Made by a program: the position numbers and the translations under genes
Shown: positions 28,406-42,490 of the stretch, one piece after another
How the letters are laid out: each line of letters opens with the position of its first letter
Position numbering within the stretch: the first letter of the stretch is position 1
From: Octopus bimaculoides
Taxonomy: Eukaryota
Direction: 5' to 3'
NCBI RefSeq assembly: GCF_001194135.2
Contig: NC_068992.1
Location: 11,077,537-11,141,536, forward strand
Length of the DNA stretch: 64,000 nucleotides
Notes under the pieces: generated by a model
Databases searched by the model: none
What the model saw: the letters and a program-made list of their open reading frames with translations, nothing else
What the model was told of the DNA's origin: nothing

Positions 28406-28687
28406 CATATGGGGGAATCACGTCTACTTTAAAGCGTTTGATTTCTTTGTTGCCTTCTTCACAAATATAAAGTCCCGTGTCACTATAGTTACTCTTCAGT
28501 ACTGTGAAGACACTGATTAGAGTTTTTGTAACTCTAGGTCGATAGTTTGTAATGTAAACTTTTTTACTGACATCAGTACTTAAAGGTTTGCCTTGTTTGA
28601 ACCACAATATATCGTCAGGAGGTTCCGTCTTTCTTGTAATGTTACATATCAGCTTCACAGGATCCTCAAGCCTGACACGCACTATGT
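28406..28687 (-). CDS. Internal coding exon B: one complete Ig domain, paralogous to exon A
   Basis: Acceptor ttttttattgcag|AC and donor TAT G|gtaagt. The exon is 282 nt (94 codons), phase 1-1. Translation: (D)IVRVRLEDPVKLICNITRKTEPPDDILWFKQGKPLSTDVSKKVYITNYRPRVTKTLISVFTVLKSNYSDTGLYICEEGNKEIKRFKVDVIPPY(G). It has LIC...W...DTGLYIC and sequons NIT and NYS. It shares LICN, DI.W.K.G, TLIS, SN..D.G.Y.C and RFKV.V with exon A. Confidence 0.9.
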
Positions 28688-30774
28688 CTGCAATAAAAAA
28701 ATTGAATACAATAGCAATGGCATTGTTCCTGGAAGTTATACATGATATGAAAGAATAATGTTCTTCATGTGACAAAATGTTTGTTGTTGAACTTAAATGG
28801 AAATTATCAATGAGAGCAGAACAGCAGTCGTCATTGCCTGTGATCAACAAACGTTTATCTAATATTATAGGCAATTTCCTGGTGTTGCCTTAATTTTTGT
28901 TTTTATCGATTAAAGTTTGTTACAGAAATTTTCAGTAATTACTCTAAATTATAAAATATTTTGTTGTTGTAACTAGCAATTTTCTCTAATGCTTAATATT
29001 TGAAGATAATTCAAAATAATAATTTTACTTAAATTACTATAAATAGGTCTATCAAGAACAGAGTTCGAGTTAAAATTAAAATTCTATGTTTAAAAATATT
29101 AAATATAATATTCAAAAAATTATTTTTGTATTTTTGTGTCAACAATATTTATTACATTTTATTAACCAATGAAATATATCAAAATTTTCAATCTAGTTGC
29201 CACTAAATCAAGCTATCATTATTATTATTTATTATTATTTTTTTTTTTGGCAAATATAAATACACACATATATATATGTTGCTACAATCTATGGACAGAT
29301 CTATATTCACATCACATCAAATGTATCACTAAATTTATTAGTCCAGAGACAATAATCTAATAAACATTTTTCTTTCTCTAAATATCTTATATTACAAAGC
29401 GACAAAAATCATTTGCATTTATTTCACAAAATATATTTCCAAAGTAGTACAACATTAATAAACTAAAGAATCACAAAAGCAATGACAAAATTCAACAGTA
29501 ACATAGGCATGCTTTATCAAAGAAACAAAAACGAAAAAAGATGATGCATCAGTCGAGTAAAAATTTTATATCAACCATTTTTGTTGCTTGGATGTTTTTA
29601 CAGAAAAAAAAATCTGTGTTAGAAATAGCCTGTGTATAAGAAAATGTCTTGGTAGTTGACCAATAGAATGAAGATTGGTCCCTTCTTTAGTTTATTTTAT
29701 ATAATTGCATTGATTTCCATGTATGGTTATTTTTACTGAGGCACAGCCATAAAAGTCAAATGTATAGATCTTCTATAATGATGATGGCTAAAAAAAAAAT
29801 ATAAATATATAACGAAGTTGTAATGCAGAATTATGTAAAGTTAAGTTAGAAGTGAGGGTCTAAAGTGAGCTATTTCTAACACACTAGCAGAGTCATCAAA
29901 ATAGAGATTAAATAATAAAAGGTTAAAGATTTATTGTCATGTTTACTATTTATAGAGAAACATAAAAGGCTTGCTTATTTTGGCATATAAGCACTGTGAC
30001 CACTCACACAATAGTCTATAGAGTAGATAAAAGCAATAGAAATAAAAGTAATACCAAATGAGGTTTCCAGTTGCTATGAATAGTTTTAGGGGTTCACATT
30101 CAAAACTGCAGATCAATTAGTTGTGAATAGGTACAACTGTCCATATATATATATATACACACACATACACATATTCATACACTCATATAATTGGTTCCAA
30201 GTTTGAAAACTAGGATATCTGGTTAAATAAATGGCTGGTCTTTATAAATGTATTTTTATTTTACTCTCTTTCATGTGGGAATTTGTAGGTGTGATTTGAT
30301 TGAAATCATGCCTGATAGAATACCAAGTTATGACTGGGTTGGTGGGGGGGAAGAAGATTTATTTATGTGTAGATGCTGGAAGTGATTTTCAAAGACAGTT
30401 GTATTTGTAACACATAACCATGAAACTTTGGCAGTTAAAAGTTGCTAACTTTTCTTCTATGAATGAAATACTGTTGATGTAATCATACAATTTTGTCTGA
30501 ATCATAGTGCTTCTAGGTAGAAGTCTTGGGAAAACAGGAGTCAAAAGTAAACTGATTTTTTTTTTTTTAGAAATGGTAATGTGCCAAACTAAATGCTTAC
30601 AGCGCATAGTCATGAACTTTTACACTCTAAGTTCCAATCCAGGTGGGGGTTAACCTCGCCTCTAATCCCTCCAAGCTTAGAAAACAAAATAGCAATAGTA
30701 TTGATTCACTACTTCATTACCTAAAAGTTTGTAGCCTATGTCAAGGTTGAAAACTATTATAATTATTACTATCA

Positions 30775-30829
<55 letters not shown>

Positions 30830-30944
30830 TATAATAATAATAATAATAATTATTATTATTATTTGATAGAATTGTTGCAGCTCTAAAAAAAAAAATAAAG
30901 ATGCCTTGCAGTGTTTCTTTGAAATCGTTACATTCTGGGTTCAA

Positions 30945-39324: not shown

Positions 39325-39445
39325 TTTATTTCATTTTTATGAGGAAAAGGGTGACTGTGACTTCGAGGTTTTGGCTGCTACCTTCATCAGACATAGTGAT
39401 GAAAAAAACTAAGCTGAAGCTTTGGAGTCACAGTCGACCCTTTCT
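39325..39445 (-). mobile_element. Possible Penelope-like terminal repeat with a degenerate hammerhead-like core
   Basis: Minus strand reads AAAGGGTCGACTGTGACTC...CTGATGAAGGT...ACCTCGAAGTCACAGTCACCCTTT...AAATAAA. There is an outer inverted repeat, CTGATGA and CGAA core motifs, and a downstream AATAAA. Confidence 0.35.
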
Positions 39446-42196
39446 TTGGAAAAATATGTATATATATTTGTATTTATCTATCTGTCTGCCTGTCAGTCTA
39501 TCTCTTTATCTATCTATCAATCAGTATATATATATGTATNNNNNNNNNNTATATATATATATATATATATATATAGACATTTATTGTGTAGTAATATTTC
39601 TACTTGCAAAATAATTTTAGGGATAAATTGAAAAGAACTCAGTACCTAGAGTAGAATAAAATTCATTGCGTATGTTAGTTTCAACAACTATTCATGTCAT
39701 TACTCAAGGTTTCAAATTCAGAAGTAATCTTCAGGTGAGGATAGATAGTAGAAAGAGTGCCAATACTGATAAAAATGATAGAAATAGGGAAAATGGAGAC
39801 ATATTGGTTGTTTGAGGTGATAGGTTGGCAGGACTGTAAAACAAATTATTGTTTTGTTAGTTTGCAATGCCAAGCTGAAATGTTGATGTGACCAGAAGAG
39901 CAACAACACCAACAACAATTGGATCCCATTTGTCTCATCTGGAACTCATTCAGGCTCATCACTCACAGAGGAATACCATTGATCATAGGAAGTCATGTAA
40001 TTGACTCAATCATCTGAGAACAGATGGATCATTAAAACTAAACCTACGCACATACACCCGGAGAGTATACTGTTCATATACAAACACAAAAGGTAAGGTT
40101 AATAGTCCAATCAACCTTTACTATTCTTCTAATAACTCATTTTCGAAATATACAAATATAATTATTCATGAATTCGTAAAGGGAATATTTCATAAATAGA
40201 ACATTTTTACTTCCTCCTCCCACTTCTCTCCCCCTCACCTGCTTCCCTAACATTGTTTCATTTCATAATTCTTAATGTTTATAGCTTACTGATCTACAAA
40301 GCTGAACAGAAGCTCTTCCAAACCTCACCTCATGACATGGCACTTATAAGAAGACCAAATCATAATATAATGTTTAGATATAATGTAATATAATTTCATA
40401 TTATACATTATTGAATCTATTCAACAATTTCAAAGTTCTTTTAAGCGTACTTGTCTTCATCATCATCGTCATCATCATCATCACGACAAATAGTTCTGAT
40501 GATTATCAGTGTCATTATAATTGAAGGGGAAACATAATTTTAACAAATATTAGTTTAAATTGTTAATAATCACCTACTTTTATTGTTGATGGTCATGAAG
40601 ATTTCACTATGTACAAAGGTGTTATGTAATTTCAAATGTTAAAAGAGACATTTTATTCCTATAAAACGTATTCTCAAACATATGCTTCTCAAAACAATGT
40701 TTACCATTCTTGTCACTCAACAATCTTGTTATTTCAAATTCCATAAATTATTATCTGTTTTAAATTGACGGTAATGTCTTTTTTCCTAACAAAGATATAA
40801 TTAATTAATTAAATTGTAATTATAGTTTCCCACTTCCTTAATGAAAGTGAGCATGTATGTAGTGTTATAAGTGGAAATTTCAACATATTTTGATAATTAA
40901 GAACCAAAATAGTAATTAGCAAAGGAATGTTTCTTAGCTTCTGCTGCATGAAAAGATTCTGTGAGATTTAGATCACTAATAAGATTGAATAAATTGGAAT
41001 GTAAGACTATTTTTAACAAGTTAGTTTTTGATGCATTAATGAATGATAAGAGCAAGCTATCCTAACCTCTTATAACTAATGTTTCATCAGAGGCAATTTT
41101 CACAAAATAACAACCAAATGAGTAAGTTAATTACCAAGTTATAAAAGTATCTTAAAACAGCACCACAATTATTAAATTTTCAGATAATATGCTGCACCCT
41201 GTGTTGTTTTATTAACTGCTAACAAAAACAAATAGAGAGGATAAGAGAGCACTTTATATCCATATTTATAATTTTTCTACAGCTTCAATCATTTATTATG
41301 AATTCTAAATTTATAAACAATTCAAATAAAATGCAGTCAATTTCTATATGAGGAAAATGTATTAATTGCTTTTTTAAAAATATATTAATTGGATATAATT
41401 GTGGTTCTTGTTAGGGCTATCCTGTTGTTTGGGATGGACTCAATTTAAATTATTAATGGGAAAAAATACTCAAGGGCATGGAATTTAAATAAACCTTTGA
41501 AAATATAATATTTAAGGAGTGATAAGCTTTGTTTTATTGTAATATCGATAAAATGAGAATAATTATAGAAATGCAAAATGATTTATAAAATGGTAATTTG
41601 TTATTTTTATTCATTAATATAAAGTAAATCTGTAGGAGTTGGATAATAATGATTTTAGGGAGGCTGCATTATATCAGATTGCTGTAAGGAAATGTGTGAA
41701 TACATTTTTATTTTAACTAATTAATTATTCCTTTAGAATGTTAAATAAATCAAAAAAATTGATATAAACATTTCTCCTTAAATAGATGCAATGCATTAAT
41801 AAAAATATTATTTTAATGAAAATAAAAATTACAAAAGAAAGAAAACACAAGGAACAACATTGATTTCAACCCATTGTAGGACACCTTTGAAATTTAAAAG
41901 CAGGTCTGATCATTCCTTAAATTGTAACAAGAATAAAGAATATACATGATTTTTTTTCAGAATCTTAAAAACAGTCAAAATAACACAAACAATCGAGAAT
42001 ATATTTTAACAAACCAATGACATAAAATGGTTTTAAAGCATTCCACTAAAACAATATTCCATGCAGAAGAAGTCATTTTACTGTGAGTAAGTGTTTATGT
42101 GAGGGAAAGAGACAGAGAAAGAAAGATTGTTAGACAGAGTTTTGATAACAGTAACATGTGCAACGCATTCAAATAGAGGGAGACTAAATTACTAAC

Positions 42197-42490
42197 CATA
42201 CGTATTTAAAACATTCACTTTAAATCGAGTGACTTCCAGGTCAGATGTTCGGCACACGTAGATGCCGTCATCTCCAGTGTTACTCCGTGCTATTTTTAGC
42301 TCACTGATAAGAGTTCTGGGAGAGACTTGACGTCGAGTTATTATAACTCTTCGTAAGACGCCCCTTGTAATGATTTCTCCGTCCTTGTACCATGTGATGT
42401 CCCGAGGAGACTGTACACTGTTGGTAGCATTACAGATCAAGTGGATGGGTTCTGTGTTCTGAACATAGGCTGTGCCTGTAAGAGTTATAT
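42197..42490 (-). CDS. Internal coding exon A: one complete Ig (I-set/C2-like) domain, similar to Dpr/ZIG-8 family Ig2
   Basis: Acceptor ttgttgtttgcag|AT and donor TAT G|gttagt. The exon is 294 nt (98 codons), phase 1-1. Translation: (D)ITLTGTAYVQNTEPIHLICNATNSVQSPRDITWYKDGEIITRGVLRRVIITRRQVSPRTLISELKIARSNTGDDGIYVCRTSDLEVTRFKVNVLNTY(G). It has the Ig B-strand Cys (LIC), C-strand Trp, D-x-G-x-Y-x-C motif and an N-glycosylation sequon (NAT). An alternative donor AC|gtatgg 5 nt upstream is possible but would be phase 2. The family assignment comes from recalled motif similarity. Confidence 0.9.

What the first reader, a model, noticed from the sequence alone, without database searches (positions are those of the whole stretch)
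28406..42490. Two paralogous, phase-symmetric Dpr/ZIG-8-like Ig exons in tandem: possible duplicated cassette or mutually exclusive exons in a cephalopod neural-recognition gene
Seen in sequence: exons A (294 nt) and B (282 nt) are on the same strand, each encodes one whole Ig domain, and they are roughly one-third identical by eye. Both start after ttgcag in phase 1 and both end at TAT G|GT in phase 1, so either can be included, skipped or swapped without a frameshift. Established knowledge: Drosophila Dprs and nematode ZIG-8 have two Ig domains, with Ig1 mediating partner binding, and exon duplication with mutually exclusive splicing diversifies Ig receptors in arthropod Dscam. Inference: both exons resemble the Ig2 type, yet I found no Ig1 or signal-peptide exon in the 13.5 kb between them, which has only a 10-N gap. 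This argues against two complete tandem genes and for one gene with a duplicated Ig2 exon, used either in tandem or as alternatives. Either would be an unusual architecture for this family.
Basis: partly seen in the sequence, partly recalled or inferred. Interest (0 to 1): 0.75.

Follow-up and report, generated by a model that had tools for sequence, protein, structure and literature searches.

The report
Octopus three-Ig Dpr-like gene exons
The two look-alike exons are the second and third immunoglobulin domains of one already-annotated octopus cell-surface gene related to fly Dpr wiring receptors; they are normally spliced one after the other, the first can be skipped, and nothing shows them used as either/or alternatives.

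Summary
On the minus strand, exon A (42490..42197, 294 nt) and exon B (28687..28406, 282 nt) each encode one Ig domain. They are 40% identical (E=4e-24) and both are phase 1-1. The 10-N gap lies in the A-B intron within TA repeats and does not affect the reading frame.

Public gene models already join the two exons. Octopus sinensis XP_036363769.1 and O. bimaculoides XP_052828063.1 read Ig1, linker micro-exons, A, B, mini-exon, tail, and match the window's exons exactly. Other models skip A: O. bimaculoides X3, O. vulgaris CAI9731002.1, and seven assembled RNA contigs, one from a run listed as cuttlefish. No isoform of this gene has A without B.

No Ig1 or first exon lies between A and B, in the window or in the gap-free Argonauta locus. 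Both exons are under purifying selection (dN/dS about 0.1). A paralogous neighbouring gene has the same Ig1-A'-B' layout, and domain trees group A with A' and B with B'. The exon duplication is therefore older than the gene duplication.

The best solved-structure matches are Dpr4 and Dpr2, then DIPs and IgLONs.

Verdict: an ordinary tandem Ig-exon duplication with a skippable exon A, not Dscam-like exclusive splicing.

The parts
57067..57090 (-). Linker micro-exon L2 (24 nt, phase 1-1), encoding (D)STSSTHS. It follows Ig1 and precedes A, or B when A is skipped.
   Evidence: An exact peptide match was found in the six-frame translation. Splice sites are tttccag|AT...TCAG|gtagga. It is present in P0002, P0071 and P0077. 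The homologous 24-nt exon in A. hians is at L001 9996-10019.
42197..42490 (-). Exon A (294 nt, phase 1-1). It encodes the second Ig domain, the ancestral Ig2 type with the CRTSDL motif. It is a skippable cassette exon.
   Evidence: Supported. It is 100% identical to residues 205-302 of O. sinensis XP_036363769.1. It is absent from O. bimaculoides X3, the O. vulgaris model and P0004/P0093. dN/dS against A. hians is 0.096. The donor GTTAGT, with T at +3, is conserved in A. hians.
41853..42093 (-). Two unique conserved non-coding blocks, 100-340 nt downstream of exon A's donor. They are candidate intronic splicing regulatory elements (inferred).
   Evidence: They are 75-77% identical to single sites in the A. 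hians intron downstream of its exon A. Each occurs only once in the window.
39540..39549 (.). A 10-N assembly gap inside the A-B intron, flanked by TA/TATC microsatellites.
   Evidence: Seen. Conserved blocks are collinear with gap-free A. hians on both sides. It has no bearing on the reading frame.
38430..38530 (-). A unique conserved non-coding block in the A-B intron, on the far side of the gap from exon A.
   Evidence: It is 80% identical to L001 29553-29654 in collinear order and occurs once in the window.
28406..28687 (-). Exon B (282 nt, phase 1-1). It encodes the third Ig domain, a divergent Ig2 duplicate that is five residues shorter at its N-terminal end. It is present in every isoform seen for this gene.
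   Evidence: Supported. It is 100% identical to the O. vulgaris, O. sinensis and O. bimaculoides proteins. dN/dS against A. hians is 0.107.
8211..8246 (-). Mini-exon (36 nt, phase 1-1), encoding (G)YTPTTPGNVKR. This is the start of the stalk that leads to the hydrophobic C-terminal tail; the tail exon lies outside the window.
   Evidence: Supported. It is present after B in all isoforms.

Best explanation
A and B are two consecutive internal coding exons of a single, very long (about 290 kb in O. vulgaris) Octopus gene for a small cell-surface IgSF protein of the Dpr/ZIG-8 branch of the Wirin family.

Gene layout. On the minus strand the order is: Ig1 exon(s) and linker L1 (upstream of the window), linker L2 (57090..57067), A (42490..42197), B (28687..28406), mini-exon (8246..8211), then optional micro-exon(s) and a tail exon downstream of the window.

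Origin. B arose from an ancient tandem duplication of the Ig2 exon. That duplication predates the duplication that produced a neighbouring paralogue with the same Ig1-A'-B' layout. If the P0004 contigs are cuttlefish, it also predates the octopod-decapod split.

Splicing. The default long mRNA splices L2->A->B and gives a three-Ig protein: a partner-binding Ig1, two spacer Ig domains, a disordered stalk and a hydrophobic tail that looks like a GPI-anchor signal. Because every one of these exons is phase 1-1, skipping A (L2->B) gives an in-frame two-Ig protein. B behaves as constitutive in this gene.

Shown versus inferred. Shown: exon anatomy, homology, purifying selection, and the existence of both isoform types in gene models and assembled contigs. 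Inferred: that A-skipping is regulated, which the conserved weak donor and conserved flanking intron blocks suggest; and that it changes ectodomain length or geometry rather than Ig1 specificity.
For: Exon anatomy and A/B paralogy:
-.

Annotated proteins identical to the window's exons:
- O. sinensis XP_036363769.1 (469 aa) and XP_036363767.1 (478 aa), and O. bimaculoides XP_052828063.1 (469 aa), contain L2+A+B+mini.
- O. bimaculoides XP_052828065.1 (371 aa) and O. vulgaris CAI9731002.1 (311 aa) lack exactly exon A.

Assembled transcripts and other loci:
- The A-skipped mRNA was assembled independently in 7 Logan RNA contigs (P0004 and P0093). One of the runs is listed as Sepia esculenta.
- The A. 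hians locus has the same exon order, the same exon lengths (294 and 282 nt) and the same splice sites. It has no gaps and no Ig1-like exon between A and B.

Selection and history:
- dN/dS is 0.096 for A and 0.107 for B.
- In an NJ tree of Ig2-type domains, (A,A') has 97.5% bootstrap and (B,B') 99.5%.
- Fully spliced Ig1-A'-B' paralogue transcripts appear in at least 8 contigs, plus one B'-skipped contig.

Family assignment:
- PDB sequence search: Dpr4 1.2e-19 with Ig1+A collinear to Dpr Ig1+Ig2; Dpr2 2.5e-18; DIPs about 1e-8; IgLONs about 1e-7; ZIG-8 1.9e-5.
- The AF2 model has three confident Ig domains, a low-confidence linker and stalk, and a C-terminal helix.
- Its top structural matches are DIP-alpha and DIP-theta Ig1-3, then Dpr2 and Dpr4.
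Against: - No read-level RNA evidence from Octopus could be obtained.
- Inclusion of A in this gene therefore rests on predicted gene models from three annotations, not on junction counts.
- In the protein collection, no assembled RNA contig containing this gene's exon A was returned. However, the word-index search also missed P0077 on the first query, so absence there is weak evidence.
- The A. hians model lacks Ig1. It starts at an ATG inside the linker micro-exon, so it is a truncated model.
- Tissue specificity and regulation of A-skipping are untested.
- Dpr-clade membership rests on similarity ranking, not on a phylogeny that includes arthropod and nematode sequences.
Confidence: 0.8

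Rival explanations
1. A and B are mutually exclusive alternative exons, as in arthropod Dscam1. Each mRNA would carry exactly one of them, diversifying the second Ig domain.
For: - Both exons are paralogous, similar in length and phase 1-1.
- Ig1->B isoforms lacking A exist.
- In the paralogous gene, one assembled contig has A' without B' (P0089/L013). Each of the two exon types can therefore be dropped somewhere in the family.
Against: - A and B are joined in the same protein in five RefSeq isoforms of two Octopus species and in the A. hians model.
- A'+B' are joined in at least 8 independently assembled RNA contigs of the paralogue.
- No isoform of this gene has A without B.
- A and B belong to ancient, separately conserved clades. 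They are only 40% identical and differ in length, so they look like two fixed domains rather than interchangeable variants.
Confidence: 0.03
2. There are two tandem paralogous genes, each with its own promoter and first exon. One would end with A and the other start before B.
For: - The 13.5 kb spacing is large, and there is an unread gap between the exons.
- One transcript contig of the paralogue (P0003/L002) and the A. hians model begin without Ig1.
Against: - tblastn and an Ig1 profile HMM found no Ig1-like or other family exon between A and B, either in the window or in the gap-free 28-kb A. hians intron.
- Annotated and assembled mRNAs splice A directly to B.
- L002's upstream part is a retained intron: a polypyrimidine tract plus gcag|AT, with identity to the spliced L009 beginning exactly at that acceptor.
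- The A. hians 'first' exon has its own acceptor site and is the linker micro-exon.
Confidence: 0.02
3. A is constitutive in Octopus. On this view the A-skipped forms are low-level splicing noise or annotation and assembly artefacts, with no biological role.
For: - In Octopus itself, A-skipping is known here only from predicted models.
- Phase-symmetric exons are easily skipped by error.
- Short-read assemblers tend to collapse isoforms.
Against: - All seven assembled contigs of the P0004/P0093 orthologue, from seven runs, are the skipped form with intact ORFs.
- Two independent Octopus annotations report the skipped form.
- A's donor carries a rare T at +3 that is conserved between Octopus and Argonauta.
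- Unique conserved intron blocks lie just downstream of A, as is typical of regulated cassette exons.
Confidence: 0.12

Closest known systems
Drosophila Dpr proteins / C. elegans ZIG-8 (Dpr subfamily of Wirins; Cheng et al. 2019, PMC6525511)
   Same: - These are the best sequence matches among solved structures: Dpr4 1.2e-19, Dpr2 2.5e-18, and the Dpr6/10/11/1 Ig1 domains at 1e-13 to 1e-16. ZIG-8 also matches, at 1.9e-5.
- Ig1 plus exon A align collinearly with Dpr Ig1+Ig2.
- It is a small ectodomain with a short stalk and a hydrophobic tail.
- The A-skipped isoform has two Ig domains, as Dprs do.
- The paper reports that Dprs and DIPs expanded in molluscs.
   Different: - The long isoform has three Ig domains, the third (B) being a cephalopod-type duplicate of Ig2.
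- In the two-Ig isoform the second domain is B, not the ancestral Ig2 type.
- Binding partners and any neural role are untested here.
DIPs, IgLONs and Lachesin (three-Ig Wirins)
   Same: - They share the three-Ig, extended, membrane-tethered architecture.
- The top structural matches of the AF2 model are DIP-alpha and DIP-theta Ig1-3.
- IgLONs appear in both the sequence and the fold searches.
   Different: - Sequence similarity of Ig1 is much weaker to DIPs and IgLONs (1e-7 to 1e-9) than to Dprs.
- The third domain here comes from a lineage-specific duplication of the Ig2 exon, not from the ancestral Ig3 of DIPs and IgLONs.
Dscam1 mutually exclusive exon clusters (arthropods)
   Same: Both involve tandemly duplicated, phase-compatible exons that encode Ig-domain sequence in a neural-type IgSF gene.
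   Different: - A and B are included together.
- There are only two copies, and they are anciently diverged (40% identity).
- There is no evidence of one-of-N selection.
Non-cephalopod mollusc two-Ig homologues (for example Haliotis 'zig-8-like', Littorina, Lottia; P0006-P0058, P0112)
   Same: - Their Ig1 is 40-47% identical, and they have an A-type Ig2 with the CRTSDL...VNVLN motif.
- They have a similar stalk and hydrophobic tail, and are about 300 aa long.
   Different: - They have a single Ig2.
- No B-type domain was found outside cephalopod sequences among the hits inspected.
- A nemertean model (Tubulanus XP_074649850.1) shows independent multiplication of Ig2.

Membership tests
Dpr/ZIG-8 subfamily of Wirin IgSF receptors | An N-terminal Ig1 most similar to Dpr/ZIG-8 Ig1 rather than to DIP or IgLON Ig1. 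| tested here: met
   A phmmer search of P0077 against PDB gave Dpr4 1.2e-19, Dpr2 2.5e-18 and Dpr6 Ig1 6.5e-16. The best DIP hit was 7.9e-9, neurotrimin 8.3e-8 and ZIG-8 1.9e-5. Ig1 itself is encoded outside the window.
Dpr/ZIG-8 subfamily of Wirin IgSF receptors | Exactly two Ig domains. | tested here: not met
   The long isoforms have three Ig domains (AF2 model). Only the A-skipped isoforms have two, and their second domain is the derived B type.
Dpr/ZIG-8 subfamily of Wirin IgSF receptors | Placement inside the Dpr clade in a phylogeny that includes arthropod and nematode Wirins. | not tested
   Only similarity ranking against PDB chains was available. No Dpr, DIP or IgLON sequence set was on hand to build the tree.
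Dpr/ZIG-8 subfamily of Wirin IgSF receptors | Heterophilic binding to a DIP/RIG-5-type partner through the Ig1 CC'C''FG face. | not testable with these tools
   This needs binding assays or co-structures.
Mutually exclusive exon cluster (Dscam1 type) | Tandem paralogous exons with compatible phase. | tested here: met
   A is 294 nt and B is 282 nt, both phase 1-1 and 40% identical.
Mutually exclusive exon cluster (Dscam1 type) | Each mRNA contains exactly one member of the cluster. | tested here: not met
   A and B are joined in P0077, P0080, P0081, P0082, P0083, P0084 and P0001. A' and B' are joined in the paralogue's RNA contigs.
Cassette (skippable) exon | The exon length is a multiple of three with symmetric phase, so skipping keeps the frame. 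| tested here: met
   A is 294 nt and phase 1-1. The L2->B junction reads TCA G|AC ATA = S-D-I, as in P0002 and P0071.
Cassette (skippable) exon | Isoforms of the same gene exist both with and without the exon. | tested here: inconclusive
   This is met at the level of gene models: O. bimaculoides X1 (469 aa) against X3 (371 aa). It is also met for skipping in 7 RNA contigs of the orthologue. Junction-level read counts in Octopus could not be obtained.
Two independent tandem genes | A separate first exon or Ig1 exon between the two Ig exons. | tested here: not met
   tblastn and an Ig1 profile HMM find nothing between A and B, in the window or in the gap-free A. hians intron.

The most novel reading that the evidence does not exclude
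Regulated inclusion of exon A could act as a conserved cephalopod switch. It would convert a Dpr-like receptor between a two-Ig form (Ig1-B) and a three-Ig form (Ig1-A-B), changing how far Ig1 reaches across the cleft or which cis partners it meets. The sister gene would do the converse by dropping B'. Together this would make a small combinatorial domain-number code in neural recognition molecules, in a lineage with large brains and expanded adhesion-gene families.
Probability: 0.2. Interest if true: 0.5.

Novelty: new member of a known kind. Interest (0 to 1): 0.25.

Why it matters
This finding corrects a tempting Dscam-like reading. The locus is a normal multi-exon IgSF gene whose isoforms are already in RefSeq, under inconsistent names: hemicentin-2, sidekick-1, DSCAM and zig-8.

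Modest value remains. It documents that cephalopods carry at least two Dpr-like genes that gained a third Ig domain by an ancient duplication of the Ig2 exon, and that these in-frame Ig exons are optionally skipped. If the skipping proves to be tissue-regulated, it would give a simple handle on how ectodomain length is tuned in Wirin-type wiring receptors outside flies and vertebrates.

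Tried and rejected

2. An internal promoter giving an Ig1-less A+B protein. This was suggested by P0003's apparent signal peptide and by the A. 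hians model that starts MSSSNS. It was rejected for two reasons. L002 is identical to the spliced L009 only from an acceptor site onward, and its upstream part is an AT-rich intron ending in a polypyrimidine tract plus gcag. The A. hians start codon sits inside the 24-nt linker micro-exon, which has its own acceptor.

3. Ig1 hidden in the window. tblastn with seven family proteins and a 74-sequence Ig1 HMM with filters off found nothing. The O. vulgaris gene spans 290 kb, so Ig1 lies upstream of the window.

4. Other micro-exons. L1 (DSSSPNADSS) and DDKTFPLSP were searched for and are not in the window.

5. DNA for the O. vulgaris locus and for the A. hians paralogue locus could not be fetched because the gene ranges were too long.

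6. tRNA and Rfam scans of the window found nothing.

7. Species of the paralogue's RNA runs. Identification from the literature failed for SRR8281669, SRR9970013 and SRR7548197. Only SRR31864758 could be tied to Sepia esculenta.

8. The first word-index protein search missed the key O. sinensis protein. Negative results from that tool were therefore not relied on.

Full report
**Observation**

The gene is on the minus strand. Reading the sequence and extracting the boundaries gives two exons:
- Exon A is 42490..42197 (294 nt), with acceptor tttgcag|AT and donor TATG|gttagt.
- Exon B is 28687..28406 (282 nt), with acceptor ttattgcag|AC and donor TATG|gtaagt.

Each translates without stops into one Ig domain with the canonical Cys...Trp...DxGxYxC pattern. 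Each matches Pfam Ig_3, ig and I-set. A and B are 40% identical over 92 residues, E=4e-24. The paralogy is real.

**The gap**

The 10-N gap at 39540-39549 lies in the A-B intron, between TA/TATC microsatellites. No reading frame crosses it.

Several results indicate the flanks belong together:
- Unique conserved non-coding blocks lie on either side of it. Blocks 41853-41948 and 41953-42093 are on the A side, and 38430-38530 is on the B side.
- These blocks are collinear with the orthologous, gap-free intron of Argonauta hians.
- Annotated proteins read straight from A into B (...VLNTY|DIVRV...) with nothing in between.

**What the exons belong to**

Protein searches identified the gene.
- O. 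sinensis XP_036363769.1 ('hemicentin-2 isoform X2', 469 aa, P0077) reads: N-terminus, Ig1, linker L1 (DSSSPNADSS), linker L2 (DSTSSTHS), A, B, YTPTTPGNVKR, an Asn/Ser-rich stalk and a hydrophobic tail. Its A, B, L2 and mini-exon segments are identical to the window.
- Cluster members show the same gene annotated as O. sinensis X1 (478 aa, with an extra micro-exon DDKTFPLSP) and X3 (389 aa).
- O. bimaculoides has X1 (469 aa), X2 (459 aa, no L1) and X3 (371 aa, lacking exactly exon A). The older XP_014774723.1 (415 aa) is also in the cluster.
- O. vulgaris CAI9731002.1 (311 aa) lacks L1 and A.

I located L2 in the window at 57090..57067 (24 nt, phase 1-1). The mini-exon is at 8246..8211 (36 nt, phase 1-1).

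Ig1, L1 and the tail exon are not in the window. The O. vulgaris gene spans about 290 kb. The species cannot be resolved among the three Octopus species from these exons.

**Orthologous locus**

The A. hians locus (L001, no N's) has the same order and the same exon sizes:
- linker 9996-10019
- A 19731-20024 (294 nt)
- B 48126-48407 (282 nt)
- mini-exon 59423-59458
- tail 88638-88826.

Its splice sites match those of Octopus, including A's unusual GTTAGT donor. There is no Ig1-like exon in its 28-kb A-B intron. tblastn found nothing, and the Ig1 profile HMM gave nothing better than E=0.19, with weak cross-hits falling only on A and B themselves. This disposes of the 'two tandem genes' rival.

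The A. hians protein model (GAB1605941.1) begins MSSSNS. That start codon lies inside the linker micro-exon, which has its own acceptor site. The model is therefore truncated, not evidence for an Ig1-less protein.

**Are both exons functional?**

Nei-Gojobori dN/dS between Octopus and Argonauta is 0.096 for A (dS 0.72) and 0.107 for B (dS 0.32). Both exons are under strong purifying selection, so neither is a pseudo-exon.

**How the exons are used**

*Both included.* Five RefSeq isoforms in two Octopus species and the A. hians model contain A and B together.

*A skipped.* This is seen in O. bimaculoides X3 and in the O. vulgaris model. It is also seen in seven independently assembled RNA contigs (P0004 in six runs, P0093 in one) of a more distant orthologue. 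One of those runs, SRR31864758, is listed as Sepia esculenta in PMC11917092.

*A without B.* This was not seen for this gene.

A therefore behaves as a cassette exon and B as constitutive. Mutually exclusive use is contradicted by the A+B isoforms.

Two features fit a regulated cassette exon, by inference only:
- A's donor has a T at +3, conserved in Argonauta.
- Unique conserved intronic blocks lie 100-340 nt downstream of A.

Read-level confirmation in Octopus could not be obtained.

**History of the duplication**

A paralogous gene lies on the same chromosome. It is annotated as O. sinensis XP_036363964.1 'hemicentin-1', as an A. hians 'unc-89, partial' model, and as O. vulgaris 'protogenin-like'. 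It has the same Ig1-linker-A'-B'-tail layout.

Fully spliced Ig1-A'-B' transcripts are assembled in at least eight contigs of one or two unidentified coleoid species. One contig (P0089/L013) precisely lacks B'. The phase-symmetric Ig exons are therefore skippable in both genes.

An NJ tree of Ig2-type domains groups A with A' (97.5% bootstrap) and B with B' (99.5%). A/A' sit among the single Ig2 domains of other molluscs. B-type domains are five residues shorter at the N-terminal end. Among the hits I inspected they occurred only in cephalopod sequences.

The Ig2 exon was therefore duplicated before the gene was duplicated. A is the conserved ancestral type and B the derived one. If P0004 is indeed cuttlefish, both events predate the octopod-decapod split.

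An apparent 'signal-peptide + A' + B'' transcript (P0003/L002) turned out to be intron retention. It is identical to the spliced L009 only from the acceptor onward, and it is preceded by a polypyrimidine tract plus gcag.

A nemertean model (Tubulanus polymorphus XP_074649850.1) shows independent multiplication of Ig2.

**Family**

Against PDB sequences, the best matches to the full protein are Dpr4 (1.2e-19, with query Ig1+A collinear to Dpr Ig1+Ig2) and Dpr2 (2.5e-18). Next come the Ig1 domains of Dpr6, 10, 11 and 1 (1e-13 to 1e-16). After those come DIPs (about 1e-8), neurotrimin and OBCAM (about 1e-7 to 1e-6) and ZIG-8 (1.9e-5).

An AF2 model built on a 60-sequence alignment has these features:
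- three confident beta-sandwich domains: Ig1 at 88-186, A at 205-299, B at 303-393, with pLDDT about 90 or higher;
- a low-confidence linker;
- a disordered stalk;
- a C-terminal helix.

Its top structural matches are DIP-alpha and DIP-theta Ig1-3, then Dpr2 and Dpr4.

Cheng et al. [quoted passage not shown] They note that Dprs and DIPs expanded in molluscs. This gene fits as a Dpr-like Wirin by sequence, but its long isoform fails the 'two Ig domains' criterion of Dpr/ZIG-8. I found no paper describing cephalopod Dpr-like genes.

**Mechanism**

The most likely mechanism mixes established knowledge with inference:
- Ig1, encoded upstream of the window, would be the partner-binding domain, as in other Wirins. 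This is established for the family and not tested here.
- A and B would be spacer domains that set how far Ig1 stands from the membrane.
- The hydrophobic tail after a Ser-rich stretch looks like a GPI-anchor signal (inferred).
- Skipping A shortens the ectodomain by one Ig domain without changing Ig1.

**Verdict**

The 'mutually exclusive' half is not supported.

The arrangement is already captured by public gene models. It is an ordinary outcome of exon duplication plus cassette-exon skipping in an IgSF gene. Interest is low to moderate. The open question is whether A-skipping is regulated.

Noticed in passing
window 25844-25956; also 999-1109, 4880-4985, 7035-7085, 23245-23329, 24548-24591, 47983-48040, 57655-57754: A SINE-like repeat of about 110 nt occurs in at least 8 copies on both strands of the window. 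Several copies also occur in the A. hians locus. ARAGORN and Rfam did not call it.
   Followed up: partly
window 41853-42093 and 38430-38530: These are unique non-coding blocks, 75-80% identical between Octopus and Argonauta. Two lie just downstream of exon A's donor and one lies mid-intron. They may be splicing regulatory elements or enhancers.
   Followed up: partly
L013 (SRR7548197) compared with L009: An assembled transcript of the paralogous gene precisely lacks exon B', giving Ig1-A'-tail. This is the converse of the A-skipping seen for the window's gene.
   Followed up: yes
proteins P0059 compared with P0009/P0012 (Logan contigs, species unknown): Another family member has an isoform in which the single Ig2 exon is skipped. 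That leaves an Ig1-only protein with a tail.
   Followed up: no
L001 9996-10019 (A. hians): The A. hians model GAB1605941.1 starts at an ATG inside the 24-nt linker micro-exon, which has an upstream acceptor site. The model is probably truncated and lacks Ig1.
   Followed up: partly
window exons A and B compared with L001: Between Octopus and Argonauta, synonymous divergence of B (dS 0.32) is less than half that of A (dS 0.72), although dN/dS is similar. This may reflect extra constraint on B's synonymous sites, or chance.
   Followed up: no
RefSeq records for the gene: Isoforms of this one gene are named hemicentin-2, protein sidekick-1, Down syndrome cell adhesion molecule and zig-8 across O. 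sinensis and O. bimaculoides. The automatic names are unreliable here.
   Followed up: yes
window 2663-2672, 3340-3624, 9812-10632, 14600-15290, 42955-43202, 48896-48905, 49524-49808, 50317-50407, 52021-52683: There are nine further assembly gaps, where checked bordered by TA, CA or trinucleotide microsatellites. Five lie in the L2-A intron. None of the annotated isoforms has residues that would need an exon there.
   Followed up: partly
protein P0094 (Tubulanus polymorphus XP_074649850.1): This nemertean model strings together Ig1-Ig2, Ig1-Ig2x3 and Ig1-Ig2x2 units of the same family. It reflects either independent Ig2 multiplication or a read-through of tandem genes.
   Followed up: partly
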